Part shown: positions 32,267-64,000 of the stretch, piece by piece
How positions within the stretch are numbered: position 1 is the first letter of the stretch
Layout of the letters: each line of letters begins with the position of its first letter
IMG/VR virus record: IMGVR_UViG_3300036770_004143
Span: 1-64,000 of that record
Length of the DNA: 64,000 nt
Strand: one strand, 5' to 3'
Program-made: the position numbers and the translations under genes
Notes under the pieces: model-generated
The model's database searches: none
The model's input: only the letters and a program-made list of their open reading frames with translations
Told to the model about the DNA's origin: nothing

Positions 32267-32506
32267 TTAGTTGGTTTTTAGGTTGGGTTCAACAACTTCA
32301 AATGTTTCAGGTGTGCCAAGTATTTGACTTTCGTCGCAAAAGGTAATATACCAAAAGGGAGGTACATTTAAAGACGCAAATTGCACGTCAACTGCTTGTA
32401 ATGTTGTTCCACCTGGCTTTGGTAAGCCTTCGTTTATTCGGCAAATGTCCTGTGCGTGCAAAACATTAGCCTCATTGGTGTATTTATATCCGTTAATAAA
32501 TGCCAT
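32267..32506 (-). CDS. Hypothetical protein
   Basis: 79-aa ORF overlapping the fibre gene stop. Confidence 0.55.
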
Positions 32507-35500
32507 AATAAGTATTTACGTTGCTTTGAATATTTGTTCTATTTAAGGATTGGTCTATTGACCAAAAAATACTTTCTTGTAAATTTCCATCCATGCCACC
32601 ACCGCCATCACCATAACTACCTAATTGAAAGTTCTGTGAAGCATTTCCTGTTGAAGGTGTTCCAGTTGATGTATTTCCTTGATTTACAGAACCATTATTA
32701 AAATATACTTTTGCCCTATTTGCAACAGTAGCGTTACTTGCATCTAATTCAATAGACAATAGTGTTTGAGTATTTGTAGTTATTGTTTGTGATGTTTGAA
32801 AAGATATAGGCGAAGTAGATGGTAAGCCAGAGGAATTAGTCATAAAAACATTAATAGTATTGTTAGCTAATTTATAAACAGATAAACCTGTCTGAGCTGA
32901 TGTTCCGCCATTATTACCAAACAATGGTTTTTGTCCAGAATTGTTGTACTTTAAAACATTTAAAACAAATGATTTTGTACCATTATGTAAAAAATTAAAT
33001 GAAGCCGTAGATGTTGGGACTGTTAAAATATCATTAGTAGAATCAAAACTTAAAGCAGGTTTATTATTAATCATGATAATTGTACCACTACTTACTATTT
33101 GCGGCTGATTTGCAGCAGTTGTTTGCATTGCATTCCTTGCATTCCCACTTTGGTCATACCACGTTGTCACAAATACATTTTGATTACTACCACCTGTATT
33201 CCAAAAAGTACTAAATGTAACTTGTTGTCCAAGGCTAAGCCCACTTGTTCCAACAGCAGTAACTATAACTGTACTGCTTGCACTTATTGTATTATTCACA
33301 TCAAAAAATACATCACCTTCTGCACCACTTGTACTTGCTCTTACCTTTATTGCACTTCCATTGTATGTTACTCTTAATTTGCGCAAAGAATATGCTACAG
33401 CTGCACTTGGATATGAATCAAGTAATAATGGAGTGTAATCCAATAATGTTACAGTCTCACCTGTTGTTGTTGTTGTTGTTACATTATATGTATTAAAATT
33501 TGCTGCTGAACCTGATAAACTTGTTGGTATAAATGGTCCACTTGCTGTTTGCCCATTGACAGTACAACCTGATGAGAATTGCGCAACATAGGTGTTTGGT
33601 ATTTTAATTACAACAACACCTGACCCACCATTACCACCTACATTTTGGACACCACCACCAGCACTTGTATATGAACCACCACCACCACCACCACCAGTAA
33701 AGTTAGTGCCTGGCAATCCAGCAGCAACCGTATTACCAGAACCATCACCACCACCACCTATTCCTCCTGTTCCTCCAGCACCAACGTATCCACCACCACC
33801 ACCGCCACCACCTCGTGGTGTTAATATTCCAGTAATAGAATTATATAATCCAGCTCCACCATTACCACCGACATTTTGTGTACCAGTTCCACCTGCAGCA
33901 CTTGCGCCTCCGCCTCCACCTCCACCAAAAGTGGCATCTCCACCACCAGGGAATCCCTCAACAGGAGTATATCCACCAATATTTCCAGCTGCACCAGCAG
34001 AATCAAAACCACCACCTCCACCAGATCCACCTGGGCTTGCTGATTGTTGAAACCTTGAACCACCACCACCACCACCTGATGAATTTATGATAAAACTAGA
34101 AGTTGAACCACTAGTACCTCTTAAACTTGATGATGTTGCACCATTACCACCACCACCAACAATTATGGAATATGGTGTTCCTTTTGATAATGTTTGCAAT
34201 GTTAATGATCTGTGGCCTCCAGCTCCGCCACCACCTCCATGACCACTACCACCGCCACCACCACCAGCAACTACAAGGTAATCAACAGATACTGTTGTTG
34301 GAATTGGTGAGGTTGTTGGTGTAACTGTATTTGTTGGTGTTATGGTGTTAGTTGGTGTTATAGTTTGAGTTGGAGTTTCTGTTGGTGTGATTGTGTTGGT
34401 AGGCGTAACTGTATTTGTTGGTGTTATGGTGTTAGTTGGAGTTTCTGTTGGTGTGATTGTGTTGGTAGGCGTAACTGTATTTGTTGGTGTTATGGTGTTA
34501 GTTGGAGTTTCTGTTGGTGTGATTGTGTTGGTAGGCGTAACTGTATTTGTTGGTGTTATGGTGTTAGTTGGAGTTTCTGTTGGTGTGATTGTGTTGGTAG
34601 GTGTAACTGTATTTGTTGGTGTTTCTGTTGGTGTGATTGTGTTGGTAGGCGTAACTGTATTTGTTGGTGTTATGGTGTTAGTTGGAGTTTCTGTTGGTGT
34701 GATTGTGTTGGTAGGCGTAACTGTATTTGTTGGAGTTTCTGTTGGTGTAACTGTATTTGTTGGTGTTATGGTGTTAGTTGGTGTTATGGTGTTAGTAGGT
34801 GTTATGGTGTTAGTTGGAGTTTCTGTTGGTGTGATTGTGTTGGTAGGAGTGATTGTGTTGGTAGGCGTAATAGTTTGGGTTGGAGTTTCTGTTGGTGTGA
34901 TTGTGTTAGTTGGTGTAACTGTATTGGTTGGAGTTTCTGTTGGTGTGATTGTGTTGGTAGGCGTAACTGTATTTGTTGGTGTTATGGTGTTAGTAGGTGT
35001 TATGGTGTTAGTTGGAGTTTCTGTTGGTGTGATTGTGTTGGTAGGAGTGATTGTGTTGGTAGGCGTAATAGTTTGGGTTGGAGTTTCTGTTGGTGTGATT
35101 GTGTTAGTTGGTGTAACTGTATTGGTTGGTGTTTCTGTTGGTGTTATGGTGTTAGTTGGAGTTTCTGTTGGTGTGATTGTGTTGGTAGGCGTAACTGTAT
35201 TTGTTGGTGTTATGGTGTTAGTTGGTGTTATAGTTTGAGTTGGAGTTTCTGTTGGTGTGATTGTGTTGGTAGGCGTAACTGTATTTGTTGGTGTTATGGT
35301 GTTAGTTGGTGTTATAGTTTGAGTTGGAGTTTCTGTTGATGTAACTGTATTGGTAGGTGTAACTGTATTAGTTGGTGTTATAGTTTGAGTTGCATCCGGA
35401 GATGCTCCTGGTGTTTTTGTGGTTGAAGGTGTAATTGTATTTGTTGGAGTTATGGTGTTAGTTGGTGTTATAGTTTGAGTTGGAGTTTCTGTTGGTGTGA

Positions 35501-36485
35501 TTGTATTAGTAGGCGTAACTGTATTTGTTGGAGTTTCTGTTGGTGTGATTGTATTAGTAGGCGTAACTGTATTTGTTGGAGTTTCTGTTGGTGTGATTGT
35601 GTTAGTTGGTGTTTCTGTTGGCTTAAATGTATTGGTAGGTGTTACCGTATTTGTTGGAGTTTCTGTTGGTGTAAATGTATTGGTAGGTGTTACCGTATTT
35701 GTTGTAGTTTCTGTTGGTGTGATTGTGTTGGTAGGCGTAACTGTATTAGTTGGTGTTATAGTTTGAGTTGCATCCGGAGAAGCTCCTGGTGTTTTTGTGG
35801 TTGAAGGTGTAATTGTATTTGTTGGAGTTTCTGTTGGTGTGATTGTGTTGGTAGGTGTCATAGTTTGAGTTGCATCTGGAGACGCTCCTGGTGTTTTTGT
35901 AGTTGAAGGTGTAATTGTATTAGTTGGTGTGATTGTGTTTGTAGGAGTTATAGTAGGTGTTGCTGTTACATCTAAACCACTTGTAATACTAGGTGTTGGT
36001 GTATTAGTAATACTTGGTGTAATTGTTTGAGTTGGTGTTATAGTTTGAGTTGGCGTTTCTGTGCTTGTTGGCGTTATAGTGTTTGAAGGTGTAATAGTTA
36101 CTGTTATTGTTGGAGTTATAGTTTGAGTTGGTGTAACTGTGTTTGTTGGTGTATTTGTAGTAGTAATTGATGGTGTTATAGTATTTGAAGGTGTTATTGA
36201 TGGGGTTACAGTTATTGTTGGAGTAATTGAAGGTGTAACTGTATTTGTTGGCGTATTTGTTGGAGTTGCATCAACTACTTCTGGAACAATTATTTCATAA
36301 TTTGTAAGATATTTTGGAACATATAATGTATATAAACCACTTAATTTACCTGTTTCGGGTCTTGAATAAACATCAAAAGGAATAACATTTTCACCAATAT
36401 TATAAGTGATATTGTTTTGCAATAACGTTACAAAAACAATCTCACCATTTAAATTTACACTTGTTATCCTTAATGCTGATGCCAT
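32493..36485 (-). CDS. Fibre/adhesin-like virion protein: Thr/Pro mucin-like stalk, Gly-rich domain, C-terminal lectin-like beta-sandwich
   Basis: About 650 aa of TPT(N/E/Q)T(I/V) repeats; [13 protein letters not shown]...GGSGVVVI Gly-rich domain; AYSLRKL...[11 protein letters not shown] domain. Confidence 0.75.
34310..36270 (-). repeat. Coding tandem repeat region (12/18-nt units, higher-order 66-nt units)
   Basis: Three perfect 66-nt copies starting at 34371, 34437 and 34503; three copies of [19 protein letters not shown]. Confidence 0.95.
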
Positions 36486-36486
36486 A

Positions 36487-37305
36487 TTAAATTATTTCAT
36501 AAGTCAAATCGTTTATTGGAATTGTTTCAGTTATCTGTACGCTTGGCACTTGGCTTCCTAATTCTGTTTCAAAGACTTGGCTAATTCTATTTATTGCTGG
36601 TTTAACTTCAAATTCTTCTTCATCAATCAAAAACCCCAACATTGTAAAATCATAAGATTGAATATAAAATTTTCTACTATCTGTATTGATTTGAGATTCA
36701 TCTTGAATATTGGTCAATATTATTGGTATATAATGCCCATTTATGGTTGCATATGATTGTCTGGATGAGAACTTTTGCAATACTTTTGTGTTGAATTTAT
36801 TCAAATCTCTAATCCTATTTGTTATTATCTTAACACTAAAATTTATATCAATTGGGACTGGCTGTGGAATTGAATAAATATCCATTCCATTTCTTTGTCC
36901 ATCCCATGTTGGAACGCTTGCAAAATAAAATGGTTTTCTATTTGGTATGGTATAAAGTGTTGCTGGGTTTGATCCGTATTTTGTATCATTCATTCGCACC
37001 AATGTAACAAATGGTGGAAGAGGATTATTATCTTCATCAATAAATGTCCATGTTTCTGTATATTGCGACCAATTCTGTGTGCTAACTATTCTATCTAATG
37101 TTTGTATTATTTTTCCTTGTGAAGTTATTTGCAAATCATTTTTAACAAAATCAAGCATTCCCCTATCCAAATCATCGTGTAATAATGATTTGGGTAAATA
37201 AGTTCCATTTTTGGTTATATTGTCCAATAATTCCTCTCTTCTTTCAAGGAGGGTTTTATCATAAGTTATATCCAAATCTGTTTTTATCTTTTTGGGTAAT
37301 GGCAT
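36487..37305 (-). CDS. Probable tail terminator/completion protein (gp15-like)
   Basis: [12 protein letters not shown]...F..YIPIIL..I.DES....RKFY...F...GFL pattern; next to neck gene. Confidence 0.55.
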
Positions 37306-41239: not shown

Positions 41240-41242
41240 TAT

Positions 41243-44045: not shown

Positions 44046-44053
44046 TATCTTAA

Positions 44054-44070: not shown

Positions 44071-44079
44071 TAATCTTTT

Positions 44080-53398: not shown

Positions 53399-53428
53399 TA
53401 TTCATTACATAACTTAAAACAAAAAAAT

Positions 53429-54562
53429 ATGAGATTAATAACATCAGAGAGTGTTTCTTGTGGGCATCCAGATAAGGTTGCTGATCAGATTTCAGATGCC
53501 ATTTTGGATGCTTACCTTACATTAGACCCCAATGCAAAGGTTGCAGTTGAAACAATGGTAAAAGACAATTGTGTGGTATTAGGGGGTGAAATTACTAGCA
53601 CTCATACAATTAATTATGAGAACATTATCAAAGCTGTGATTGAAGATATTGGCTACCATGATGCTAATCATGGGTTTTATTTCAATAATATCACTATAAT
53701 TAATTTGATTGGAAAACAAAGTCCTGAAATTAATTCTGCTGTTTTACAGAATGGTGAAGAATCTTTGGGGGCAGGCGATCAAGGTTTTATGACAGGATTT
53801 GCAACAAATGAAACAGAAACATATATGCCAATTGGTATGTATGTTGCAAAGAAATTGGCAGATTATGTTTATAGTCTTGATTTAGGTCCAGATATTAAAA
53901 CACAAGTGACAATTGAAGAATGGCCTGATTTTAAAAGAATCCATACCATTTTGGTTTCTACAATGCATAGGACATTTACCTTGGAAGAGTTGAGGACAAA
54001 ACTCACTAAATTCATCTATGATAATAATATGGAACTTCAAGATGATATATTTGCACTTATTGACAAGGAAACAAAAATTGTTATAAATCCAGCTGGTTCT
54101 TGGCATGTTGGTGGTCCAGTTGCAGATTGTGGTGTTACAGGAAGAAAGATTGTGGTTGACCAATATGGACCATATAACCCTGTTGGTGGGGGTGCATTTA
54201 GTGGAAAAGACCCAAGCAAGGTAGATAGAAGTGGTGCTTATTTAGCAAGGTATATTGCAAAAAACATTGTAGCAGCAGGGTTTGCAGATAAATGTGCTGT
54301 TGAAATTGCTTATATGATTGGCGTTGCTAAACCAGCATCACTAAACATAAACACATTTGGGCAATATTCTAATGAATGGTTAGAGGATATTGTTAGTAGG
54401 ATATTCCCAATGACACCATCTAGCATTATTGATCATTTTAATTTGAAAAGACCAATCTATCTTGATTCATCAAGAGGTCATTTTGGAAATGATATAATGC
54501 CTTGGGAAAAATTGGATATGGTTTATGAGTTAAAGCAATTAGCGGCTATTCATAAGGTTTAG
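53429..54562 (+). CDS. metK: S-adenosylmethionine synthetase
   Basis: TSESVSCGHPDKVADQISD, GAGDQG, KTQVT, G.TGRKIVVDQYG, GGGAFSGKDPSKVDRS, GHFG. Confidence 0.97.
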   Translation: MRLITSESVSCGHPDKVADQISDAILDAYLTLDPNAKVAVETMVKDNCVVLGGEITSTHTINYENIIKAVIEDIGYHDANHGFYFNNITIINLIGKQSPEINSAVLQNGEESLGAGDQGFMTGFATNETETYMPIGMYVAKKLADYVYSLDLGPDIKTQVTIEEWPDFKRIHTILVSTMHRTFTLEELRTKLTKFIYDNNMELQDDIFALIDKETKIVINPAGSWHVGGPVADCGVTGRKIVVDQYGPYNPVGGGAFSGKDPSKVDRSGAYLARYIAKNIVAAGFADKCAVEIAYMIGVAKPASLNINTFGQYSNEWLEDIVSRIFPMTPSSIIDHFNLKRPIYLDSSRGHFGNDIMPWEKLDMVYELKQLAAIHKV

Positions 54563-55702
54563 ATAATTGTCAATAAAATCCTGGGGGTAGTTAGACTTTT
54601 TCATAGTTCTAACTACCTCATTTATTTTATCTTCATCTGATAACCTTGGATTTGAACTAACACCATCCTCTATTGGCCAACCATTTAAATCTGATACTGG
54701 TAATTTATATTCTTTATTGTCTTTCTTTGATGTGATGTTTTTGACCTTCTCCCAAATTACAGCCAACAAAGTACTATCATGCCACTTGTATATCATACCT
54801 TTATAACCCATTTTCTCCAACATATTTGACATATATATCACCTGCATTTGGTATGGTACATTATCACTCCCATACATTTTAGCAGCAATATCATATAAGT
54901 TTAATGGATCTTTATTGAAGGGATATAAATCTTTCAAATCAACTTTTGCTGTATATAATGTACCAGAAACAATCCTTTCTTTTTGATTTAAATTTGTATA
55001 AAAGAATAATCTATTTTTCCCCCACCATTGCTCTGAACTTGTGTATGAATGTTTTCCAAAATGAGATGGATCTAAGTATTCCAAATCTGGTTCACCAAAA
55101 TGATATAACTTAACATAATCACCTTCTGTTTCCAATTGGGAAAGCCAAAAGTCATTAAATAATACTTTATTTGGTTTTTCTGGCAAATTATTTACATCTC
55201 CCTTTATAGTTGATTCTAATAATTGCTTCACCTCTGGATGAGATAAAAATAAATCAATATCTTTTTTTATTCTTTTTGAATCACAAATTGTTGCTTTTTT
55301 AAGAAAACGTTTTGGTATTTTATTGTATTCCTTATGCCAAATTTCTATTCTATAATCTTCTGGTAAATCTAGTAATTTTTTATCATACCAATCTTGCATT
55401 CTTTGATTTACATCTTCCTCTGTTGATAGTCCATTTGAATCTAAATATAGATTGTCTATTTTAACATAGGCATGGACAATAGTTGAATCCTCCAATTCAC
55501 CCTCATCATAATCATAAATTAAATCAGCCAATATTAAATAATATCTAATATTTCTATCTGGGTATTGTTTTTTTAATTTAACAATAAGATTATCCGCAAA
55601 ATAATTACAGAACCCATCTTGATAATTATATTCATTACTTGTGTTCCACTTTGGTTCAAGTTCTTCCCTTAATATTTCTTTTATTGATTGGATTAGTTTC
55701 AT
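54539..55702 (-). CDS. Hypothetical two-domain protein; C-half possibly ADP-ribosyltransferase-like
   Basis: N-terminal IKEILREE; G.C...HAYV...LDS papain-like hint; LYH...LDP..FG...FFYT...G.LY...V. Confidence 0.45.
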   Translation of the reverse strand: MKLIQSIKEILREELEPKWNTSNEYNYQDGFCNYFADNLIVKLKKQYPDRNIRYYLILADLIYDYDEGELEDSTIVHAYVKIDNLYLDSNGLSTEEDVNQRMQDWYDKKLLDLPEDYRIEIWHKEYNKIPKRFLKKATICDSKRIKKDIDLFLSHPEVKQLLESTIKGDVNNLPEKPNKVLFNDFWLSQLETEGDYVKLYHFGEPDLEYLDPSHFGKHSYTSSEQWWGKNRLFFYTNLNQKERIVSGTLYTAKVDLKDLYPFNKDPLNLYDIAAKMYGSDNVPYQMQVIYMSNMLEKMGYKGMIYKWHDSTLLAVIWEKVKNITSKKDNKEYKLPVSDLNGWPIEDGVSSNPRLSDEDKINEVVRTMKKSNYPQDFIDNYLNLMNSR

Positions 55703-55728
55703 ATACATAAATATATCATAATCACATT

Positions 55729-56985
55729 TTAACCAATATTAAGTTGCCCTGTAATTCTATCACACCAACCTTTTGATGTTGAATATGGCCAAACAACCCA
55801 ATATTTTGGCTGTTTTGTTGTTTGAAAATCTCTCCATATCTTGCAATATTTATCTGGGTCGTTCATCATTGAATTAATCTCATTCTTATCAGCATCCCTT
55901 CTATATAATGTTTCATCATTCTCATCATGGAATGCAACCACCCAATATTCATAATCTTTTTCTGGAACTGAACTATATTGGACATCAATGCAATGCCGGA
56001 ATATAATGGAAAAACTATTCTCCCATTCTTCTTCTGTCTTATATTCCTCCTTAACTGGGGGATTTTTCTTATCTATTGTCCATTGTTGAACTGCACGTTT
56101 TGCAAAATGAATTCCAGCATATTTTTCATAATCCCTTAATGTTCTAACTGGACCAAACCCATATAATCCATCATGACCCTCTTGTTCCACACCATCCACA
56201 CCAAACAATCTCTTATTTAAATAATGTGCCCTATCATTACGTTTAACCCATTCCTTATCATCATCCCATTGTTTAACCTTTCCCTTTCTTGTATATTCAT
56301 GATATATGATTGGAAAGTGGGGGTGAAACAAATCATAACCCCAAGTATAAGCCCTAACTGCAATGGATATCTCCTCACCATGAAAATAATATTCTGGATT
56401 ATGTTGAACCTCCTTTGCAAATTGCCCCAATGTGAAACAATAATGTGCTGAATAAAATCTTGCTGGAATTGGTTTTTGTAATGTCTTCCATTCATCAATT
56501 GTTTCCGGCATAAAAAATACATTCCCCTCTGGTGCAAACCTATCAAAAACCATCCTCCAAGGGTCTTGCACCCTCCCTGCTGGATCATTTGTTGGTTCAT
56601 AAGAACAAGCATAGGAAGTTAATAAAGGCTTCTTATAGCCATCTTTCTGTAACCCCTTAATTATTTTTATTAATGTGTCATCCCAATCTTGATTGAAACG
56701 CATATGTGAATCAAGTTGAAGGGTATATTCCTCATTATTATACAATTGCTGAAGTTTATTCCTTGCCCAACAAGCACCTTTTGATTCAGCATAAGGAATA
56801 TCCAATATTTTAAATCTTTTATCTTTTCTCCACTTATCAAGATTATCAAAACCATCCTCATCAGCATATTGTCTTGCAATGGCAAAAACAAGGTTCTTTG
56901 GTTTTTTTGCTTTATCCAGAATATCTTCAATGGTTTTAACTAGTTCAGGGTCACGATAACTTGCAATTTGAACAAATATTTTCAT
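55729..56985 (-). CDS. GT60-like polypeptide N-acetylglucosaminyltransferase
   Basis: IFVQIASYRDPEL..TI, SKGACWAR, LQLDSHMRF..DWD, F.GEE....RAYTWGYD...P....YH.Y. Confidence 0.8.
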   Translation of the reverse strand: MKIFVQIASYRDPELVKTIEDILDKAKKPKNLVFAIARQYADEDGFDNLDKWRKDKRFKILDIPYAESKGACWARNKLQQLYNNEEYTLQLDSHMRFNQDWDDTLIKIIKGLQKDGYKKPLLTSYACSYEPTNDPAGRVQDPWRMVFDRFAPEGNVFFMPETIDEWKTLQKPIPARFYSAHYCFTLGQFAKEVQHNPEYYFHGEEISIAVRAYTWGYDLFHPHFPIIYHEYTRKGKVKQWDDDKEWVKRNDRAHYLNKRLFGVDGVEQEGHDGLYGFGPVRTLRDYEKYAGIHFAKRAVQQWTIDKKNPPVKEEYKTEEEWENSFSIIFRHCIDVQYSSVPEKDYEYWVVAFHDENDETLYRRDADKNEINSMMNDPDKYCKIWRDFQTTKQPKYWVVWPYSTSKGWCDRITGQLNIG

Positions 56986-57031: not shown

Positions 57032-59389
57032 TTAATTCTCCCTTCTTAAATCACCAGCATAATGGTCAAATCTATGATGTTCAACAGGGGTTAATAACAA
57101 TATGCTAGGCTTGATAACATTCTTAATTGTTTCTTGATACATAAAAGACATCCATGTATTTTCAAAAGGGTGGGCAAATTTTGTATCAATAAACATTTTT
57201 TTATTCCCAGCCTTTGTTATAAAATGCGTCCAGTTGCAATAATAAATCTCACCATCAGCATAAGGCAAACCATCAAGAGATTTTATATTATTGAATTTTG
57301 TTCTTGGTGCATTTGGATCCAATCCATGTACTGGAAGATTTGGTTTCTCTGGCCAATTCTTAATTCTAAAGTCTTGGGGAACATTATACCAACTCCATTG
57401 TGTTGAATTATCCCCATAGAATTCACTAAAATTAATCTTTAAAAAATCATAACTTTCCTTCTGGATGATATTCAAACATTTATCATATAAGTTGGGGGAA
57501 TATCTATTGAACCCATTTCTACATACCTCATTTGGCTTGTTATAGAAATTCATATCATCCTCGGAGAATATCATAACATCCAAATCACTTGCATCAAAAT
57601 GCTCCGCAATAAACTGCCTTCCACCACATATCCCCAGATTATCTTTCTTTATATGCTCAAATCCATATTCCTCACATAATTCAATATATCTTGGTGTTGT
57701 TGTTAAATCTGTTGAATTATCCAATAAAAACTTGCTTGTCTTATGGATAAAATTGGCATCATAGTCCAACATAGATTTTATCAACGTTTCAAACTGGTTG
57801 GGTGAATTAAACCCAATAACATATAAGCCAACTTTTGAAGTATCCAAAGGCGTGCTACTTATCATCTTATTTTCTGATTTTATCTCTAATGTGTTATTCT
57901 TTAAATCCTCAAAAAACTTTCCAAACAACCCATCACCCCCAATTTCAAAATAATTAATCAAATCAGAATGTTTATAACACATAATGCTAAATATGGATTC
58001 CTCTGTCCCCATATAACCCTCTTGCAAAGTGGATGTCAATATATTATAATATATTGAATTAATATCACTTATGGTATTCTTTGGTCCACCAAAAAATCCA
58101 CCCCTTGCCACCTTATTAACCTTATCACCAACAAGTGAAACCATTTTGTTATATTCAAACCCATGTATTTCTGTTGTTGTTTCATAAGGAAAACACACAA
58201 AGCTAAATTTTGATATATATTTTGACAAATTATTCAAAACCTTATCATGAGTGAAATACCCTGGATGAACCGTATTTGTTAAACCAGCATCAATCCAAAA
58301 CATATATTCTGAATCAAATGGATCCATAATCTTTGCATCATGCAACAAGAACATCTTGGACATAACTAGGGGGTTATAGTATTCTAATTTTGCTTGTGTG
58401 GATTCTTCTAACCATCCAGCTTGTTGATACCAGTGGGGGTTTGTTCTTATTTTTTGGATTAAATTAAAGTAATTATTATTTTTGAACCAATCTAAATCTT
58501 TTTCAATAAAAAAAGTATTTTCTTCATTTCTATGTGTAAAAACAAACTCTTTTAATTTAGCATCACCAAATATAATTAGGTTATTTTCAACATCTAATAA
58601 TTGTTTAAATTTATCCAAATAATGATTATAAGAACGATTCCAACCATCACCCAATGAATCTCTTTTTATATCCCATAATCCAGTTACTAGTGTAACATTC
58701 CTTTTTTCTTGAGTAAAATCCATTATATTATTTCTAATTTTATCTAAATCCCAAAAAGCTAATGTTTTTCTATTCCCATTGTCAAAATTATCCACTATAA
58801 CATCTTCCTCTAAATAAATCTCAGGATTAGGTAAATTAAATGGATTAGACATTAAATTAACAGGATAAAACCTGCCGTATTCAACACCTTCATTTTCTCT
58901 ATGAATATCATCTTTTTTACAAGGAAACCATTTTTCACCTATTTTTTTAGCCCAAGTTGTACTTAAAAGATATTTACATTTTGAGTTCAAAATGTTTTTT
59001 ATGATTTTAACCCCATCTTCAATTGGCATATGACCAATAACGTCTCTAACAATTAGCAAATCACCATTAGGTATTTTATCATTTATTATGTCAAATTCTA
59101 TAAATTTTATTCTATTATTAGAATATCTTTCATTATTATAATCAATTGCTTTTTTTACAATGTCACCACCAGTATAACTTTCAAAATTAAAAACAATCTC
59201 CTTCATCCAGTTAAAGTCACCACAAGGGATGTCAACAACTGACTTTATGTTTTTATCTTTTATTAGTCTTTTTATATTTTCTCTAAGTTTTTGAGTTTCT
59301 AATAAAGTACTACCTGGTCCTGATTTACTTTCAGTGCTACCAAAACCATTATTATCATATATATTATTAAAAATATCTTTATAATTCAT
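57032..59389 (-). CDS. Tri-domain fusion: SAM methyltransferase + HtrL/YibB-like glycosyltransferase + GT-A domain
   Basis: SGPGS...VVDIPCGDFNW; VTLVTGLWDI...WIDAG...GGFFGG...GTEESI; NLGICGGR...FSEDDM. Confidence 0.7.
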   Translation of the reverse strand: MNYKDIFNNIYDNNGFGSTESKSGPGSTLLETQKLRENIKRLIKDKNIKSVVDIPCGDFNWMKEIVFNFESYTGGDIVKKAIDYNNERYSNNRIKFIEFDIINDKIPNGDLLIVRDVIGHMPIEDGVKIIKNILNSKCKYLLSTTWAKKIGEKWFPCKKDDIHRENEGVEYGRFYPVNLMSNPFNLPNPEIYLEEDVIVDNFDNGNRKTLAFWDLDKIRNNIMDFTQEKRNVTLVTGLWDIKRDSLGDGWNRSYNHYLDKFKQLLDVENNLIIFGDAKLKEFVFTHRNEENTFFIEKDLDWFKNNNYFNLIQKIRTNPHWYQQAGWLEESTQAKLEYYNPLVMSKMFLLHDAKIMDPFDSEYMFWIDAGLTNTVHPGYFTHDKVLNNLSKYISKFSFVCFPYETTTEIHGFEYNKMVSLVGDKVNKVARGGFFGGPKNTISDINSIYYNILTSTLQEGYMGTEESIFSIMCYKHSDLINYFEIGGDGLFGKFFEDLKNNTLEIKSENKMISSTPLDTSKVGLYVIGFNSPNQFETLIKSMLDYDANFIHKTSKFLLDNSTDLTTTPRYIELCEEYGFEHIKKDNLGICGGRQFIAEHFDASDLDVMIFSEDDMNFYNKPNEVCRNGFNRYSPNLYDKCLNIIQKESYDFLKINFSEFYGDNSTQWSWYNVPQDFRIKNWPEKPNLPVHGLDPNAPRTKFNNIKSLDGLPYADGEIYYCNWTHFITKAGNKKMFIDTKFAHPFENTWMSFMYQETIKNVIKPSILLLTPVEHHRFDHYAGDLRREN

Positions 59390-59392: not shown

Positions 59393-60022
59393 CTATTTTT
59401 TTATTTTACAAACCCATACAGCATTAGAAAACTCATTTGGTTTGTAAGATTCTAAATTATTTTCAAGTACAGATTCATTAATATCTTCTTCGGTTATTTC
59501 GCACCAATTCCAAATTTTATCTTTAATTTCAGTTTCATACACTTCTTTATTAACTGAATAGTCGTGCGCTAAAATATAATCACCTGATTTTATTTTTTTT
59601 GATAAAACTTTAAATTCCCCTATTTTCCAACCACCATCACACAATACAATAGTAACACCATCTTTTTGAATAAAATCTACAACTTCTTGTTTTACACTTG
59701 ACCAATCATCACTAAAAATATTTTCAACTCTCACATCAATACCTTTTTCAATTATTTGATTATACCAGGGTCTTTCAGAAATATCATAAGACAATATTTT
59801 TGTATCCAAATTTAATTCATCTGAAATTATTTTTAAAAACTCTGTAAAACCCCCCAAAGCTGTACCTATTTCTAAAATCCTACTTGGTTTAACGTCATTT
59901 AAAAAATTATAAAATAGTTGATAGGCATGATGGCTTTGTTGTGCTGTACACCCCATAAATGCAGATAAACTATCACCATCAATCAAGTTTGTAAATCTAG
60001 TTATTCTTTCTTGTATATTCAT
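59393..60022 (-). CDS. Class I SAM-dependent methyltransferase (CmcI/Methyltransf_24-like)
   Basis: ILEIGTALGG, SYDI, LCDGG, GDYILAHD. Confidence 0.75.
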   Translation of the reverse strand: MNIQERITRFTNLIDGDSLSAFMGCTAQQSHHAYQLFYNFLNDVKPSRILEIGTALGGFTEFLKIISDELNLDTKILSYDISERPWYNQIIEKGIDVRVENIFSDDWSSVKQEVVDFIQKDGVTIVLCDGGWKIGEFKVLSKKIKSGDYILAHDYSVNKEVYETEIKDKIWNWCEITEEDINESVLENNLESYKPNEFSNAVWVCKIKK

Positions 60023-60024
60023 AA

Positions 60025-60738
60025 TTAAAATCTTCTATGTAATTTATTTGTTTTATCATGGAATTCAAAACAATCTGGCAAATAATGTCTAAAACTATCC
60101 CAATCCCATTTCATATTAGCTTCTAACGCTGAAACCCCAATGTCAAAACCATCAGGGTAATTCCTAATGTTATTGTGTACTGAATACCATAAAAATTCTT
60201 CCCATCGTCTAACAAAATATCTAAATTTCCAATTATTCCTAAAAACCAAAAATTGTTCATTAACTACATGAGCTTCATCCCACTTATCATGTTCAAATAC
60301 ATTATAGTCATACATTTTTCGATCAAAAAAACAATTACTCATATCTTTTTTATAATCACCAATTTTAGATGGTCTTTCAAATAAAAAATCTAAATCATTT
60401 TTTTCCATATGATTAAATAAATTAAACAATTTATCTTCGGAAAAATTTTCAGTCATTCTCCAATCAGCATCATTATATATAATATAATCATATCCTTTAT
60501 CTAAACAATATTTTAAAGATAAAACTTTTAAATTTAAAAAAAATGAAAATCCTGGATTACCATCATCATACTTGTCTAACTCAAATAAATCTAAATTGAC
60601 TTTGGGTCCAACAATGCAATTTTCATTTGTTGTTATATTAAAAGATGCTGTACAAGATTCACTATATTTACTATAACTCTCTGTAGCATTATCCAAGTAT
60701 GGTTGGCCAACTGCTAATGTTGTAAAAATATATTTCAT
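60025..60738 (-). CDS. Putative GT-A glycosyltransferase
   Basis: TTLAVG..Y N-terminus, LK, YIIYNDAD (DxD); cluster context. Confidence 0.55.
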   Translation of the reverse strand: MKYIFTTLAVGQPYLDNATESYSKYSESCTASFNITTNENCIVGPKVNLDLFELDKYDDGNPGFSFFLNLKVLSLKYCLDKGYDYIIYNDADWRMTENFSEDKLFNLFNHMEKNDLDFLFERPSKIGDYKKDMSNCFFDRKMYDYNVFEHDKWDEAHVVNEQFLVFRNNWKFRYFVRRWEEFLWYSVHNNIRNYPDGFDIGVSALEANMKWDWDSFRHYLPDCFEFHDKTNKLHRRF

Positions 60739-61721
60739 TAGGCTTCAACAATTTTTTCTAAAAAACTAAGTGTATAATCAAAATCATAATACTCAGGTAG
60801 TTTATTATCAACAAAGATAGGGGTTTCAATATATTGTCTATATAGTGACTCATTATTATCAATTTCTTTTACCAAGGCTAAAAAATCATTCAAATCTGTA
60901 AAATTATGCAAATTAATGAAACTTTCAGGATTGAAACCTTCTTCTAAAATATATTTATTACCAAAGAATATAGGTATTGCTCCACTAAAAAACGCATGAT
61001 ATATTTTTTCTTGTAAAATGTAATCAGTGTTGGTATAATGTATTGAGATATTAAATTTATATTTTTCAAAAAATCCAATTTTTTCCCTATACGTTAACCC
61101 ATCTATACGACCATTATATATTGAATTTTGCCATTGGTATTTATTTAATGCGCCATTACCATGTAAATTTTGCCTCCATGGTCCAGAGGAGGTAACTTCT
61201 TTGTATTCAGATAATTTGTCAAAAACTTGCCCTCTAAATTCATTATTTGATGCTTGAGTGATTGAGCAAAACCCAATGTTTCTTTTAGATATTAAATCAA
61301 AATTTCTTTTTTTAGTTAACCAGCTATGTGGGCTATCAACCAATCTTGATTCATCAAATAAAGTCCAAACATCAAGAACACCAGAAGGTTGTCTCAAATA
61401 TCTTTCATGTTCAAATTTATTATAACCTAATGCCCATTGATTATTATGTAAAAGTAATGGTTGGTTAAAATCGGCAACTTCACCTGAAATATATACAAAT
61501 TTTTTGTTTTCATCAGATTGATGGTGTTTTGTTGGTAGCTGGCCTGTGTAGGTATCAATTTGGTTTTCATTATAATTCAAATCAGATTGTATAATAATAT
61601 CAGGATTTATTGGGTCAATAATTATATTATATTTTTTTGATAAAATAAATTTAATATAATTCATCCAACTATGTTGCCCTATATTTGGAAACCCTTGTCT
61701 AGTAATTCTAATTGTTTTCAT
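60738..61721 (-). CDS. GT10 alpha-1,3-fucosyltransferase-like protein
   Basis: YISGE, KYKFNISI...DYILQEKIYHAFFSGAIPIFFG, FNPESFIN. Confidence 0.8.
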   Translation of the reverse strand: MKTIRITRQGFPNIGQHSWMNYIKFILSKKYNIIIDPINPDIIIQSDLNYNENQIDTYTGQLPTKHHQSDENKKFVYISGEVADFNQPLLLHNNQWALGYNKFEHERYLRQPSGVLDVWTLFDESRLVDSPHSWLTKKRNFDLISKRNIGFCSITQASNNEFRGQVFDKLSEYKEVTSSGPWRQNLHGNGALNKYQWQNSIYNGRIDGLTYREKIGFFEKYKFNISIHYTNTDYILQEKIYHAFFSGAIPIFFGNKYILEEGFNPESFINLHNFTDLNDFLALVKEIDNNESLYRQYIETPIFVDNKLPEYYDFDYTLSFLEKIVEA

Positions 61722-62412
61722 TTAATAAGTTTGTTAGTTTAATTGTATTTTCAGTATATGGCCCATTATCATGTATAATGCAGGCATTTAAATTTAATAA
61801 TGAAATTTTATTATCTTCAATAATTATACTATCTTTTGTATCCAAAGTACTAAAGAAGAAATCACACTCTTGGTCAATAATAATATCGTCATTTAATAAA
61901 TATTGAATTGTCCATCTTCCTTGGTCATCAATCCCAGTTTGATATTCTTTTTCAATAATGTCTTTAAGGTGGTAAACAATCTTATCTGTGTACCCAAAAT
62001 AAGTGCCTGAGTTCAAATATTTAGAATCGTTTATGGATCTTTTATTGTCATATAAATGCGTATAATTTGTTGGAGGCCATAAACCTTTTTCTGCACCCAT
62101 AATAATATTGCAATTTAATAGTGTAAATTTATCAATAATATCATTTGGTGGTTTGATAAAGTTTGTATCTGTCGCATCTAAAAATAAAATATATTCATAT
62201 TTGCCAATAATATTTAATTCTATATATTCTAAAACCTTTACTGTTTTATAGTAAAATAATTTATCATAGTAAGACCCATTAGTTATTAATCCTGAGTTTC
62301 TAACAATATGAATGTTATCAATAGGAAAATATTTTATGGCGTTTTTGTAAAATGTTGGCTCATAATAATCAGGATAATCAAATAGTGCTGTGATTAATGC
62401 TATTTTATTCAT
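61708..62412 (-). CDS. PLOD/LH3-type glycosyltransferase domain protein
   Basis: ILFLDATD, IIMGAEKGLWP, YLNSGTYFGY, DDQ, IIIDQECDFF, IIHDNG. Confidence 0.75.
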   Translation of the reverse strand: MNKIALITALFDYPDYYEPTFYKNAIKYFPIDNIHIVRNSGLITNGSYYDKLFYYKTVKVLEYIELNIIGKYEYILFLDATDTNFIKPPNDIIDKFTLLNCNIIMGAEKGLWPPTNYTHLYDNKRSINDSKYLNSGTYFGYTDKIVYHLKDIIEKEYQTGIDDQGRWTIQYLLNDDIIIDQECDFFFSTLDTKDSIIIEDNKISLLNLNACIIHDNGPYTENTIKLTNLLNENN

Positions 62413-62413
62413 G

Positions 62414-63052
62414 TTAATTATTATTAATTTGTTTATAAAATTCATTTATAAGATTCTCATCACTCATATATATTTTGTCTTCACCAAAAAACTTAAATGG
62501 TATTTCATTTTCCCAAAAAAATATCAATTCGTTTCCTTTTGAATTTTCAATAATTTTATTTGAATCATCATAAACTTCAATAAATGAAAATTTGGGATAA
62601 ATACAAACCATATTATTACTAATATCAATAATTTGTTTATGATGAGCATTTCCTCTATATTTATTACCCCATAAAAAAGAAAATTCATTAAATTTTGATG
62701 GTACTGCAACATATCCTTTATGTGATATTTTGGGTAATAGTTCTAACAAATCTGTTGGAGTTATTATATCTTCCAAAGTATGAGAACAAATGCTATAATC
62801 AAATTTACCATACTTGTTAACGTACTCTAATAATTCAATCCAAGTAGTTTTATCTTGTATGTTAAAGTTAAAAAATTTTACATCATCTTTTTTTATTTCA
62901 ACAATATCCGCAACAAATTTACATTCAGGATATGACCAAAATTGTAATGATGCGCCAATATCAATAGTTTTTAAATTATTATCAGATATTATTTTTTTAA
63001 CTTCATCTATTAATTGTTTAACGGATTTGTTGTATTGCCAATGTGTTATCAT
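62414..63052 (-). CDS. Class I SAM-dependent methyltransferase-like protein
   Basis: IDIGAS, FDYSICSHTLEDI, GYVAVP. Confidence 0.65.
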   Translation of the reverse strand: MITHWQYNKSVKQLIDEVKKIISDNNLKTIDIGASLQFWSYPECKFVADIVEIKKDDVKFFNFNIQDKTTWIELLEYVNKYGKFDYSICSHTLEDIITPTDLLELLPKISHKGYVAVPSKFNEFSFLWGNKYRGNAHHKQIIDISNNMVCIYPKFSFIEVYDDSNKIIENSKGNELIFFWENEIPFKFFGEDKIYMSDENLINEFYKQINNN

Positions 63053-63659
63053 AATTTTTATTTAAGAAAAATATATCTTGTTGAATTAACTCATATGTTA
63101 TTGGGTGATTTATATTACCAATAAGTTCCACAGGTTTAAACCCCAAATTATCCATATATTCGTAAACAAATTCTTTTGCTGGTGAATTTTTATTATATTC
63201 AACCAAAGAGATTTCCATTAAAATACCCTTAGCTTTTTTGAATATATCTATTCCCCCATTTATAATATCAATCTCAGACCCTTGGACATCAATTTTTATT
63301 AAATCAAATGTTTTATTTAAAAATATATTAGAAATTGTTTTAGTTTGTTTTTTTTTAATAATGATTTGATCATCATCATAAAAAGATGTGTTCTCTCGAT
63401 AAATTGAATTACCTGTACACCTTGGTTCGTTTTTTCTAATGTAAAAATCAACTTGTTTTGCAACGTCACTTAATAAATCTATTGAGTAGTCAACCCCCAA
63501 AGTACGCAATACATCTTCACAAGTTTCATTACCCTCAATCAAATAATAATAAGCATTTGGAAATACAATCATACTTTCTTTATAAAACTGACCAACATTA
63601 GCACCTATATCTAAAATTGATTTAGGTTCAAAATAATCTTTAATTTTTTCTAAACCCAT
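63018..63659 (-). CDS. FkbM-family methyltransferase
   Basis: ILDIGANVG, IEGN, LIKIDVQGSE..I..G, LMEIS, QQDIFF. Confidence 0.85.
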   Translation of the reverse strand: MGLEKIKDYFEPKSILDIGANVGQFYKESMIVFPNAYYYLIEGNETCEDVLRTLGVDYSIDLLSDVAKQVDFYIRKNEPRCTGNSIYRENTSFYDDDQIIIKKKQTKTISNIFLNKTFDLIKIDVQGSEIDIINGGIDIFKKAKGILMEISLVEYNKNSPAKEFVYEYMDNLGFKPVELIGNINHPITYELIQQDIFFLNKNYDNTLAIQQIR

Positions 63660-63665
63660 AATGAA

Positions 63666-64000
63666 TTAAAAAATTACTACCCCAGTTCCGGTTAAATGAC
63701 CTAAATGTGAAATATCTATTTTATTAATATCAATAAACTTCCAAAAAGTAATCATTTCTTCATTTAATTTTATGTCATCTAGTAAAAGATAACCTTTGTA
63801 ATTTATTTCCTTTAAATAATTGAAAAAAGTTTTCTCAAATGTTCCATCATGGAAAGTATCAAGCAAAATATATCTTGAACTTAATATTAAATCTAAATAT
63901 TCTGGTTTTAATATGTCATCAATATATACATTAATATTTGTAGGGGTAACTGTTAAAGTTAATTGATTATGTAAATTAAATGTATTAATTTTATTACTTG
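63666..64000 (-). CDS. Methyltransf_24-like methyltransferase, C-terminal part (start outside window)
   Basis: Frame open to the window edge; LDTFHDG..E, GYLLLDDI, GH.TGTG. Confidence 0.65.
   Translation of the reverse strand, partial: SNKINTFNLHNQLTLTVTPTNINVYIDDILKPEYLDLILSSRYILLDTFHDGTFEKTFFNYLKEINYKGYLLLDDIKLNEEMITFWKFIDINKIDISHLGHLTGTGVVIF

What the first reader, a model, noticed from the sequence alone, without database searches (positions are those of the whole stretch)
32493..64000. Candidate phage mucin system: Thr/Pro fibre plus polypeptide O-GlcNAc transferase and glycan-building cluster
Seen: a tail-module protein with ~650 aa of nearly pure TPT(N/E/Q)T(I/V) repeats, and at 55.7-64 kb an operon with GT60-like, HtrL-like, GT-A, GT10-like and PLOD-like glycosyltransferases plus five methyltransferase domains, next to metK. 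Established: GT60 enzymes add alpha-GlcNAc to protein hydroxyls (Skp1 hydroxyproline; Thr of trypanosome mucins) and are related to mucin-initiating ppGalNAc-Ts; PLOD GT domains glycosylate collagen. Inference: the phage builds methylated O-glycans on its own fibre, making a stiff protease-resistant stalk or a glycan mimic that could engage the glycan-uptake receptors of a Bacteroidota host. Virion glycosylation is known in a few phages and giant viruses, but I know of no described mucin-type pathway like this. The link between the two loci is inferred, not shown.
Basis: partly seen in the sequence, partly recalled or inferred. Interest (0 to 1): 0.85.

Follow-up and report, generated by a model that had tools for sequence, protein, structure and literature searches.

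The report
Phage mucin-like fibre and glycosylation locus
An uncultivated freshwater jumbo phage encodes a tail fibre with a 663-residue threonine-every-second-residue spacer and a soluble glycosyltransferase/methyltransferase locus whose first enzyme resembles mucin-initiating enzymes; related phages place that enzyme's gene directly after genes for the same kind of fibre, so the phage probably sugar-coats its own fibres, though no biochemistry shows this yet.

Summary
ORF 32493-36485(-) encodes a 1330-aa virion fibre. Residues 73-735 form a strict (Thr-x)n array with 312 Thr, 305 of them in one dipeptide register. At 54.5-64 kb lies a tightly packed minus-strand cluster. It contains a PF11397/GT60 enzyme, a methyltransferase + HtrL-like + GT2-like fusion, GT10-like and PLOD-like transferases and CmcI- and FkbM-type methyltransferases, with metK alongside.

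- All 74 related loci that hold both genes share one frame: GT60, then a variable cassette of 1-10 tailoring genes, then the HtrL-GT2 fusion. Cultured Xanthomonas phages XacN1 and Xoo-sp13 are among them.
- In 20 of 35 dereplicated lineages the gene immediately upstream of GT60, on the same strand, encodes a Thr/Pro-linker fibre protein. The background is 0 of 369 genes elsewhere in the same clade.
- Some of these proteins share the N-terminal domain of the window's fibre.
- The GT60 model (pLDDT 94.7) is closest to mucin-type ppGalNAc-transferases.
- No enzyme has a membrane segment.
- XacN1 virions were already reported to contain periodic acid-Schiff (PAS)-positive glycoproteins.

Best reading: cytoplasmic mucin-type O-glycosylation of the phage's own fibres, with a strain-variable methylated glycan. 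Acceptor, donor sugar and function are untested. I rate it a new variant of known virus-encoded virion glycosylation.

The parts
32493..36485 (-). Fibre gene, 1330 aa: N-terminal domain, (Thr-x)n spacer, glycine-rich domain, C-terminal distal domain
36261..36485 (-). Fibre N-terminal domain (residues 1-75), probable virion-attachment module. Conserved in the same slot in relatives and at the N-termini of GT60-adjacent Thr/Pro proteins of more distant relatives.
   Evidence: 80-93% identity in close relatives; 37-41% identity, E 4e-7 to 5e-6, to L041-44:6078-7985, L048 and L073; 31% identity, E 1e-4, to L074
34281..36269 (-). (Thr-x)n repeat array, residues 73-735. 312 Thr, 305 in one register. 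Proposed O-glycan acceptor.
33591..34280 (-). Glycine-rich domain (Pfam Gly_rich_2, E 4e-20)
   Evidence: The same domain recurs in ORFs beside GT60 in relatives.
32496..33590 (-). Fibre C-terminal domain, about 365 aa. Matches phrog_10356 'virion structural protein'. Probable receptor-binding end.
   Evidence: No Pfam or PDB sequence match.
36487..37305 (-). Conserved 272-aa gene abutting the fibre start; marks the upstream edge of the variable fibre slot
31844..32230 (-). phrog_7759 protein just downstream of the fibre. A paralog sits just upstream of the second GT60 beyond the window end.
31275..31862 (-). Fib_succ_major domain protein between fibre and sheath
   Evidence: E 1.4e-23
28074..31223 (-). 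Tail sheath (1049 aa); anchors the fibre gene to the tail module
53396..54562 (+). S-adenosylmethionine synthetase (metK), probable SAM supply for the methyltransferases
54539..55708 (-). 389-aa protein of unknown function, last gene of the cluster. Conserved only in the window's subclade.
55729..56985 (-). GT60-type (PF11397) glycosyltransferase. Soluble, with a D92-x-H94 motif. Proposed initiating polypeptide HexNAc-transferase.
57032..59389 (-). 785-aa three-domain enzyme: SAM methyltransferase (1-229), HtrL_YibB-like GT-A (230-500), GT2-like GT-A (about 515-775, with an invariant E-D-D motif)
59393..60022 (-). CmcI/rhamnosyl O-methyltransferase-like protein
60025..60738 (-). 237-aa cassette gene, unassigned. 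Possible small GT-A, based on one D-x-D motif only.
60738..61721 (-). GT10 (fucosyltransferase family)-like glycosyltransferase
61708..62445 (-). PLOD-type GT-domain-like glycosyltransferase
62414..63052 (-). 212-aa cassette gene, unassigned. Possible methyltransferase, motif only.
63018..63659 (-). FkbM-family methyltransferase
63666..64000 (-). 3' part of a 184-aa ORF cut by the window end (whole in L004:2766-3320). Possible methyltransferase. Preceded outside the window by a second GT60 paralog (L004:1513-2763, 70% identical to 55729-56985).

Best explanation
The window is the first 64 kb of a roughly 270-kb uncultivated jumbo myophage. It is a distant relative of Xanthomonas phage XacN1 and probably infects Saprospiraceae (Bacteroidota).

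It encodes a soluble, cytoplasmic protein O-glycosylation system whose most likely acceptors are the (Ser/Thr-x)n spacers of the phage's own fibre proteins.

Proposed sequence of events:
1. Late in infection the 1330-aa fibre is made. It has an N-terminal anchor domain, a 663-residue (Thr-x)n spacer, a glycine-rich domain and a distal domain.
2. GT60-type transferases put a first sugar on spacer threonines. There is one copy in the window and a paralog just beyond it. By family analogy the sugar is alpha-GlcNAc from UDP-GlcNAc.
3. The conserved bifunctional HtrL-like/GT2-like enzyme adds the next sugars.
4. A strain-variable cassette extends and O-methylates the glycan. In this phage it holds GT10-like and PLOD-like transferases and CmcI-, FkbM- and other methyltransferases. 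The phage metK supplies SAM.
5. The result is a long, extended, glycan-coated stalk carrying the distal domain.

Shown here: the domain identities, the conserved locus frame, the adjacency to fibre genes in relatives, the shared N-terminal domain, the fold similarity to mucin-type transferases, and the lack of membrane segments.

Inferred: the acceptor, the donor sugar, the order of steps and the biological role.
For: 1. Conserved frame. All 74 loci that hold both genes have a GT60 upstream of the HtrL-GT2 fusion on the same strand. Between them lie 0.6-8.2 kb (1-10 ORFs of at least 150 aa) of differing glycosyltransferases, methyltransferases, a carbamoyltransferase (XacN1) or a sulfotransferase (marine contig L238).
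2. Adjacency to fibre genes. After dereplication at 95% identity, 20 of 35 lineages with enough flank have a Thr/Pro/Ser-rich ORF as the immediate same-strand upstream neighbour of GT60; in the raw per-locus listing such ORFs end 37-92 bp before GT60. No gene among 369 in the sheath loci of the 61-63%-sheath-identity clade is of this kind, and 16 of 711 are overall.
3. Nature of the neighbours. They hit PHROGs annotated 'virion structural protein' and 'tail fiber protein'.
4. Shared modules. The window fibre's N-terminal domain recurs at the N-termini of GT60-adjacent Thr/Pro proteins, and its glycine-rich domain recurs in ORFs beside GT60.
5. GT60 itself. PF11397 at 9e-65. The model has pLDDT 94.7. 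The top 13 PDB fold matches are ppGalNAc-transferases T1, T2, T4 and PGANT9, and T7, T10 and T12 follow further down the list; E is about 1e-10 to 1e-9. D92, H94 and H229 are invariant in 38 homologs.
6. GT60 biochemistry from the literature. Family members make GlcNAc-alpha-Thr on protist mucins and GlcNAc-Hyp on cytoplasmic Skp1. In the Skp1 pathway the next enzyme is a bifunctional two-transferase fusion (PMC8724618, PMC9472816).
7. Solubility. No transmembrane segment or signal peptide in any enzyme or in the fibre, and no flippase, polymerase or lipid-carrier transferase in the cluster.
8. The 785-aa protein matches tandem GT-A enzymes: LH3, K4 chondroitin polymerase, LARGE1, COLGALT1 and mimivirus R699.
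9. XacN1 carries the orthologous core (ORF334 and ORF330). Its virions show at least two PAS-positive bands.
10. The (S/T at i, i+2) register is shared by 72 distinct Thr/Pro proteins of the clade.
Against: No biochemical or proteomic data exist for this phage.

In the window itself the fibre is about 20 kb from the cluster, and no Thr/Pro ORF lies within 10 kb of GT60 in the window's own subclade.

The adjacency in relatives is inherited synteny, so the 20 lineages are not 20 independent events. It may simply reflect the cluster sitting at the edge of the fibre module.

GT60 and the HtrL-GT2 fusion are core genes, present also where the sheath-side fibre slot is nearly or wholly empty. L101/L008 has only a 106-aa stub there, and L089 has nothing, although GT60 status is not known for the L089 contig. 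GT60 presence therefore does not depend on the sheath-slot fibre.

Thr/Pro linkers also occur unglycosylated in many proteins.

The donor sugar cannot be read from sequence.

Only 64 of about 270 kb were examined for alternative substrates.
Confidence: 0.55

Rival explanations
1. The locus glycosylates virion proteins other than the Thr/Pro spacers, for example capsid, sheath or tube subunits as in mycobacteriophages. The (Thr-x)n arrays are then plain extended linkers.
For: GT60 and the HtrL-GT2 fusion are core genes, conserved at 67-100% identity across the clade and 42-48% in Xanthomonas/Stenotrophomonas phages, whereas the fibres are highly variable. The XacN1 glycoprotein bands were not identified. 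Mycobacteriophage glycans are reported on capsid and tail-tube C-termini (as cited in PMC12619734).
Against: This does not explain the immediate same-strand adjacency to Thr/Pro fibre genes in 20 of 35 lineages against a background near zero. It also does not explain the specific fold similarity to mucin-type polypeptide transferases, whose acceptors are Ser/Thr/Pro-rich.
Confidence: 0.2
2. The cluster remodels a host glycan (lipopolysaccharide, capsule, S-layer or outer-membrane glycoprotein) to block superinfection or alter the cell surface, or it makes a soluble glycoconjugate. The fibres are unrelated to it.
For: Variable glycosyltransferase cassettes in jumbo cyanophages have been read as outer-polysaccharide modification systems (PMC7824862). 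HtrL/YibB homologs lie in enterobacterial LPS core loci (my own knowledge, not tested here). A host-derived outer-membrane barrel gene lies next to the cluster.
Against: No enzyme has a membrane segment. The cluster has no flippase, polymerase, ligase or polyprenyl-phosphate transferase. The phage looks lytic, with a replication and structural gene set and no integrase in the window; the only transposase-family gene is a TnpB. The locus is co-oriented with, and abuts, fibre genes in relatives.
Confidence: 0.1
3. The enzymes hypermodify phage DNA with a methylated oligosaccharide to evade restriction.
For: The locus lies beside DNA polymerase and other replication genes in all relatives. Phage glycosyltransferases that build glycans on DNA are known (Pyle et al. 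2024, as cited in PMC12619734).
Against: XacN1 DNA was cut by BssHII, NaeI and SpeI and was sequenced conventionally. No base hydroxymethylase was seen in the window; the only related signal is a weak thymidylate-synthase-like stretch in the RNR fusion. The GT60 fold matches polypeptide transferases, not T4-type DNA glucosyltransferases. Only 64 of about 270 kb were examined.
Confidence: 0.05

Closest known systems
CAZy GT60 polypeptide alpha-GlcNAc-transferases (Dictyostelium Gnt1 and its Golgi paralog, Trypanosoma cruzi TcOGNT1) and the cytoplasmic Skp1 glycosylation pathway
   Same: Same Pfam family (PF11397). Soluble like cytoplasmic Gnt1. The known acceptors are Thr in Thr/Pro-rich mucin repeats or a hydroxyproline. 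In the Skp1 pathway the initiating GT60 is followed by a bifunctional two-transferase fusion, as it is here (PMC8724618, PMC9472816).
   Different: Viral and prokaryotic setting. An extra roughly 100-residue beta-rich C-terminal domain. The second enzyme is an HtrL-like + GT2-like fusion rather than GT2 + GT74; whether HtrL corresponds to GT74 was not resolved. The tailoring cassette is strain-variable. Activity is untested.
Animal mucin-type O-glycosylation (GT27 ppGalNAc-transferases acting on Ser/Thr/Pro tandem repeats)
   Same: These are the best fold matches of the phage GT60. Both have a D-x-H metal motif. The acceptor is a variable-number tandem repeat rich in Thr and Pro.
   Different: Only 11-15% sequence identity. 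No ricin-type lectin domain was identified. The compartment is cytoplasmic, not Golgi. The acceptor has a hydroxy-amino acid at every second position rather than in clusters.
Mycobacteriophage virion glycosylation (Freeman et al. 2023, known to me only through citation in PMC12619734)
   Same: Phage-encoded glycosyltransferases modify the phage's own virion proteins in the bacterial cytoplasm.
   Different: The reported sites there are C-termini of capsid and tail-tube subunits. The enzyme families and hosts differ. No long mucin-like acceptor and no conserved frame around a variable cassette are described. I could not read that paper.
Giant-virus autonomous glycosylation (chlorovirus PBCV-1 capsid glycans; mimivirus fibril glycans and collagen-type transferases such as R699)
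   Same: Virus-encoded soluble multi-domain glycosyltransferase/methyltransferase fusions build methylated glycans on virion proteins or fibrils. Mimivirus R699 is among the top fold matches of the 785-aa enzyme. The XacN1 authors drew the PBCV-1 parallel.
   Different: Those are eukaryotic viruses, with N-linked or other linkages and different acceptors. No homology of the acceptors.
XacN1-group jumbo phages (XacN1 ORF334-ORF330; Xoo-sp13; Stenotrophomonas phages CM1 and RAS14)
   Same: Orthologous GT60 (42-48% identity) in all four. In XacN1 and Xoo-sp13 the orthologous HtrL-GT2 protein (41%) sits in the same frame next to DNA polymerase (checked in these two only). PAS-positive virion proteins in XacN1. 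A giant neighbouring protein carries short Pro/Thr/Ser linkers.
   Different: The cassette holds a NodU-type carbamoyltransferase instead of methyltransferases. There are no long (Thr-x)n arrays, only 60-87-residue linkers. The hosts are Gammaproteobacteria.

Membership tests
CAZy GT60 / Pfam PF11397 polypeptide GlcNAc-transferase | Sequence matches the family model above its curated threshold | tested here: met
   219.9 bits against a cutoff of 21, E 8.8e-65. Also phrog_24687 'glycosyltransferase', 2e-161.
CAZy GT60 / Pfam PF11397 polypeptide GlcNAc-transferase | GT-A fold with a D-x-H/D-x-D metal site, related to GT27 | tested here: met
   Model pLDDT 94.7. Best PDB matches are GT27 ppGalNAc-transferases. 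D92, H94 and H229 are invariant in 38 homologs.
CAZy GT60 / Pfam PF11397 polypeptide GlcNAc-transferase | Lacks the C-terminal ricin-like lectin domain of GT27 | tested here: inconclusive
   No ricin Pfam hit. However, a beta-rich domain at residues about 325-414 is present and its fold was not identified separately.
CAZy GT60 / Pfam PF11397 polypeptide GlcNAc-transferase | Uses UDP-GlcNAc and forms an alpha linkage to a polypeptide Thr or Hyp | not testable with these tools
   Needs an enzyme assay. Only the genomic context points to a polypeptide acceptor.
Mucin-type O-glycosylation system | Acceptor protein with long Ser/Thr/Pro-rich tandem repeats of variable number | tested here: met
   663-residue array, 47% Thr and 18% Pro. 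Array lengths of about 410-720 residues in homologous fibres of relatives.
Mucin-type O-glycosylation system | Dense O-glycans actually present on the repeats | not testable with these tools
   Needs glycoproteomics or lectin/PAS staining of virions or of co-expressed proteins.
Phage-encoded virion glycosylation | Phage glycosyltransferase genes linked to structural genes, with glycoprotein detected in virions | tested here: inconclusive
   Linkage to fibre genes is met in relatives. Virion glycoproteins are shown only for the distant relative XacN1, and the bands were not identified.
Serotype-converting / envelope glycan modification (Gtr-type or O-antigen type) | Membrane-embedded transferase, flippase or lipid-carrier enzymes | tested here: not met
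   No segment reaches a transmembrane-like hydropathy in any cluster protein. No such Pfam families.
Phage DNA glycosylation | A pathway for a hydroxymethylated base plus DNA-specific glycosyltransferases, giving restriction-resistant DNA | tested here: inconclusive
   No clear hydroxymethylase in the 64 kb. XacN1 DNA is cut by three enzymes. The remaining roughly 200 kb of the genome were not examined.

The most novel reading that the evidence does not exclude
A very abundant clade of aquatic jumbo phages runs a cytoplasmic mucin-type O-glycosylation pathway on its own fibres; its GT60 forms more than 7,400 protein clusters at 90% identity. The hydroxy-amino-acid-every-second-residue spacers would be dedicated glycan carriers. 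The variable cassette between the two conserved enzymes would diversify the fibre glycan between strains much as O-antigen loci diversify bacterial surfaces. This would be the first prokaryotic-virus counterpart of mucin biosynthesis and a possible evolutionary link to eukaryotic GT60/GT27 initiation.
Probability: 0.4. Interest if true: 0.85.

Novelty: new variant of a known kind. Interest (0 to 1): 0.68.

Why it matters
If the fibres are glycosylated, this would extend mucin-type protein O-glycosylation from eukaryotic secretory pathways to a virus of bacteria working in the cytoplasm. It would also assign a function to one of the commonest uncharacterised glycosyltransferase families in freshwater viromes.

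The conserved frame with a variable interior implies selection on glycan diversity at the virion surface. That bears on host recognition, on resistance to proteases and grazers, and on how phages stick to or slip through polysaccharide matrices.

The idea is directly testable. XacN1 is cultured, carries the orthologous core enzymes and already shows unidentified PAS-positive virion proteins. The enzymes are soluble and could also serve as tools for making defined glycopeptides in bacteria.

Tried and rejected
- Near-identity DNA search of 24 kb against cultured phages found nothing. The relation to the XacN1 group shows only at protein level.
- PDB sequence searches found nothing useful for GT60, the 212-aa and 237-aa cassette proteins, or the fibre C-terminus.
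- Pfam on excised pieces gave little. The fibre N- and C-terminal domains, the C-terminal third of the 785-aa protein, the 184-aa ORF and a GT60-adjacent Thr/Pro protein gave no hit. The methyltransferase N-terminus gave only sub-threshold hits; PHROGs later confirmed it.
- Late-promoter test. The T4-type TATAAATA motif is not enriched. A motif ATATTTATAT lies 19-28 nt upstream of several start codons, including the sheath gene and the g170-g272-fibre operon. It was not found upstream of the glycosylation cluster or its extension. Co-regulation could therefore be neither shown nor excluded.
- Context of more distant GT60 homologs. Three of four contigs were too short to be informative. One marine contig showed the same frame.
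- I looked for GT60 proteins fused to Thr/Pro segments among 150 representatives. Only one weak case turned up.
- A link between HtrL_YibB and CAZy GT74, the second Skp1 enzyme, was not found in the literature search and is left open.
- The Freeman 2023 paper was not available.
They were re-run without it.
- A simple presence/absence co-variation between the sheath-side fibre and the cassette was considered and dropped. Only two contigs carry both regions (window contig; L008/L101), and both have a cassette.

Full report
**Where the window comes from.** The window matches the first 64 kb of IMG/VR contig 3300036770_004143 (270,075 bp). Both the GT60 gene and the sheath gene map at 100% identity to matching coordinates. 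GC content is about 30%. The window carries a tail module: sheath, gp19-like tube, baseplate hub and two giant ORFs. It also carries replication genes: family B polymerase, DnaB-like helicase, UvsX-like recombinase, SSB and an RNR subunit. No cultured phage is similar at DNA level. At protein level the GT60 has 42-48% identical homologs in Xanthomonas phages XacN1 and Xoo-sp13 and in Stenotrophomonas phages CM1 and RAS14. In XacN1 and Xoo-sp13, the two whose neighbourhoods were examined, the region around the polymerase is syntenic. A phage-borne outer-membrane barrel gene (49892-53215) is 80% identical to a gene in a Saprospiraceae MAG and 71-74% identical to Haliscomenobacter genes, one on a 3-Mb contig. 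This points to a Saprospiraceae (Bacteroidota) host.

**The fibre.** ORF 32493-36485(-) encodes 1330 aa with four parts.
- Residues 1-75 form a small domain conserved in relatives.
- Residues 73-735 form the repeat array.
- Residues 724-961 match Pfam Gly_rich_2 (4e-20).
- Residues 996-1329 match phrog_10356, 'virion structural protein'.

The array is more regular than 'Thr/Pro-rich' suggests. Of 312 Thr, 305 lie in one dipeptide register, and the longest unbroken (T-x)n run is 359 residues. The x positions are P (111), N, I, V, E or Q. The array has 29 acidic and 4 basic residues. The DNA is a nested tandem repeat whose youngest copies are 98% identical. Homologous fibres in close relatives carry arrays of about 410-720 residues.

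The gene occupies a variable slot between a conserved 272-aa gene and the sheath. That slot holds a 1330-aa protein here and 619-, 915- or 1141-aa proteins elsewhere. One relative has only a 106-aa stub and another has nothing. The fibre has no signal peptide or membrane segment. It is the only ORF of this composition in the 64 kb.

**The enzyme cluster.** From the window end down to 54539 the minus strand is tightly packed with short or overlapping junctions. The Pfam assignments are:
- PF11397/GT60 (9e-65)
- HtrL_YibB (1e-18)
- CmcI/rhamnosyl O-methyltransferase (8e-10)
- GT10 (1e-10)
- PLOD-type GT domain (9e-16)
- FkbM (4e-14)
- metK, convergent on the plus strand

The 785-aa protein has three domains. 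The first is a methyltransferase (phrog_3382, 2e-35). The second is the HtrL-like domain. The third is a GT2-like domain with invariant N-S and E-D-D motifs. Its model is confident over the last two domains. The best fold matches are two-domain GT-A enzymes: LH3, K4 chondroitin polymerase, mimivirus R699, LARGE1 and COLGALT1.

Two cassette proteins (60025-60738 and 62414-63052) and the truncated ORF at the window end remain unassigned. The locus continues past the window. The truncated 184-aa ORF is preceded by a second GT60 paralog, 70% identical to the first.

**What relatives show.** GT60 homologs are extremely common in metagenomes. At least 7,451 clusters at 90% identity were scored, and 4,348 representatives at 50% identity have E of 1e-3 or better. 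I fetched 77 IMG/VR loci around GT60 and 80 around the sheath. Three findings stand out.

1. One frame is shared. All 74 loci that hold both genes have GT60 upstream of the HtrL-GT2 fusion on the same strand. The interval is 0.6-8.2 kb and holds 1-10 ORFs of at least 150 aa, and its content differs widely. XacN1 has a NodU-type carbamoyltransferase there. A marine contig has a second GT60, an FkbM methyltransferase and a sulfotransferase. This is a conserved frame around a diversifying interior.

2. GT60 follows fibre genes. In the clade about 70% identical to the window's GT60, the gene immediately upstream of GT60 on the same strand is usually a Thr/Pro/Ser-linker protein; in the raw per-locus listing such ORFs end 37-92 bp before GT60. 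After dereplication this holds for 20 of 35 lineages with enough flank, and for 20 of 30 outside the window's own subclade. Such genes are otherwise rare: 0 of 369 genes in the sheath loci of the 61-63%-sheath-identity clade (which I take to be the same lineages), and 16 of 711 overall, all 16 in the sheath-side slot of the window's subclade. These neighbours are modular. They have small cysteine-containing domains joined by (S/T-x)n linkers, and C-terminal domains that hit 'virion structural protein' and 'tail fiber protein' PHROGs.

3. The two loci share modules. The window fibre's N-terminal domain recurs at 37-41% identity (E 4e-7 to 5e-6) at the N-termini of GT60-adjacent Thr/Pro proteins in L041-44, L048 and L073, and at 31% (E 1e-4) in L074. 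Its glycine-rich domain recurs in ORFs beside GT60. A phrog_7759 protein sits both downstream of the fibre and upstream of the second GT60.

The (S/T at i and i+2) register is common to 72 distinct Thr/Pro proteins. The median is 78% at i+2 against 14% at i+1.

**The initiating enzyme.** With 38 homologs the GT60 model reaches pLDDT 94.7. Mucin-type ppGalNAc-transferases (T1, T2, T4, PGANT9) take the first 13 places in the PDB fold search, and T7, T10 and T12 follow further down. The catalytic domains superpose at about 4-5 angstroms over 245-285 columns. Wall teichoic acid glycosyltransferases, GlfT2 and SpsA also appear lower in the list. D92-x-H94 and H229 are invariant, as in the metal site of that enzyme class. 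Related predicted structures occur in uncultured tailed phages, Megaviridae and Pandoravirus. According to the literature, GT60 enzymes make GlcNAc-alpha-Thr on protist mucins and GlcNAc-Hyp on cytoplasmic Skp1. In the Skp1 pathway the next two sugars come from one bifunctional fusion protein. That parallels GT60 plus the HtrL-GT2 fusion here.

**Interpretation.** The most economical reading is a cytoplasmic protein O-glycosylation system for the phage's own fibres, with the (S/T-x)n spacers as acceptors and a strain-variable, methylated glycan. The arguments in favour are the soluble enzymes, the absence of lipid-carrier machinery, the adjacency and shared modules, the enzyme's fold relatives, and the PAS-positive virion proteins of XacN1.

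Several limits apply. No chemistry has been done. In this phage the two loci are about 20 kb apart. The adjacency is inherited synteny and could reflect only a shared module boundary. The core enzymes persist where the sheath-side fibre is absent.

The rivals are another virion protein as acceptor, host glycan remodelling, and DNA hypermodification. XacN1 DNA is cut by three restriction enzymes, which weakens the DNA rival.

A fully extended 663-residue spacer would span roughly 150-200 nm. This is my estimate from 0.25-0.3 nm per residue, not a measurement.

**Novelty.** Virus-encoded virion glycosylation is known from chloroviruses, mimivirus and mycobacteriophages, and was proposed for XacN1 in 2018. 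Full-text searches found no report of a GT60/mucin-type system tied to Thr/Pro fibres in phages. A 2025 paper on freshwater 'moraphages' with predicted Bacteroidota hosts notes four core glycosyltransferase groups without assigning targets. I did not test whether that lineage overlaps this one. I rate the finding a new variant of a known kind. It is of good interest because the clade is abundant and the hypothesis can be tested in a cultured relative.

Noticed in passing
window 49892-53215 (+): A phage-encoded 1107-aa outer-membrane beta-barrel with a carboxypeptidase-regulatory-like N-domain and a signal peptide. It is 80% identical to a Saprospiraceae MAG gene and 71-74% to Haliscomenobacter genes. 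It is inserted, together with metK, between the glycosylation cluster and the polymerase, and only in the window's subclade.
   Followed up: partly
L004:1513-2763 (contig coordinates 64223-65473, just past the window end): A second GT60 paralog, 70% identical to the one in the window. The window's subclade therefore brackets its cassette with two GT60 genes, whereas most relatives have one.
   Followed up: partly
window 31844-32230 (-) and L004:919-1461: Two paralogs of phrog_7759 (unknown function). One lies directly after the fibre gene and one directly before the second GT60. This is a further, unexplained tie between the two loci.
   Followed up: no
window 16410-17600 (-): An IS605-type TnpB (OrfB_IS605, Cas12f-like TNB domain, HTH) sits between two giant ORFs (2257 and 1558 aa) of unknown function (no PHROG match) that flank it in the tail-module region.
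   Followed up: no
window 40173-44102 (-): A head-to-tail run of eight small ORFs. In relatives the corresponding ORFs are clear paralogs with a shared N-terminal motif, and copy number varies (about 10-12 in L089 and L101). No family match. I did not verify that all eight window ORFs are paralogous.
   Followed up: partly
window 44080-44769 (+): A phage-encoded Fe/Mn superoxide dismutase.
   Followed up: no
window, 19-28 nt upstream of the starts at 3699, 22602, 24445, 27030, 31223, 37989, 44080 and 44809: A conserved AT-rich motif (ATATTTATAT on the coding strand) lies before several genes, including the sheath gene and the operon that contains the fibre. It looks like a promoter element. 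It was not found before the glycosylation cluster.
   Followed up: partly
window 28074-31223 (-), sheath residues about 3-365: The N-terminal third of the unusually long sheath protein shows weak similarity (about 20-25% identity, E about 1e-5) to the fibre's C-terminal domain.
   Followed up: no
L191 (CAZYMK010000348.1) and P0101: Small phage contigs of this clade are deposited in bins labelled Geobacter and 'archaeon'. L191 carries the barrel gene next to GT60 at about 90% DNA identity to the window. These taxonomic labels are probably binning errors.
   Followed up: partly
L001:22186-25323 and L002:21496-25227 (XacN1 ORF325 and its Xoo-sp13 homolog): The giant hypothetical protein encoded near the GT60 locus of the Xanthomonas phages contains 60-87-residue Pro/Thr/Ser linkers. 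It is a candidate for the unidentified PAS-positive virion bands.
   Followed up: partly
window 250-1956 (-): A 568-aa protein whose C-terminal half is an RNR small subunit. The N-terminal half is unassigned apart from a weak thymidylate-synthase-like stretch.
   Followed up: no
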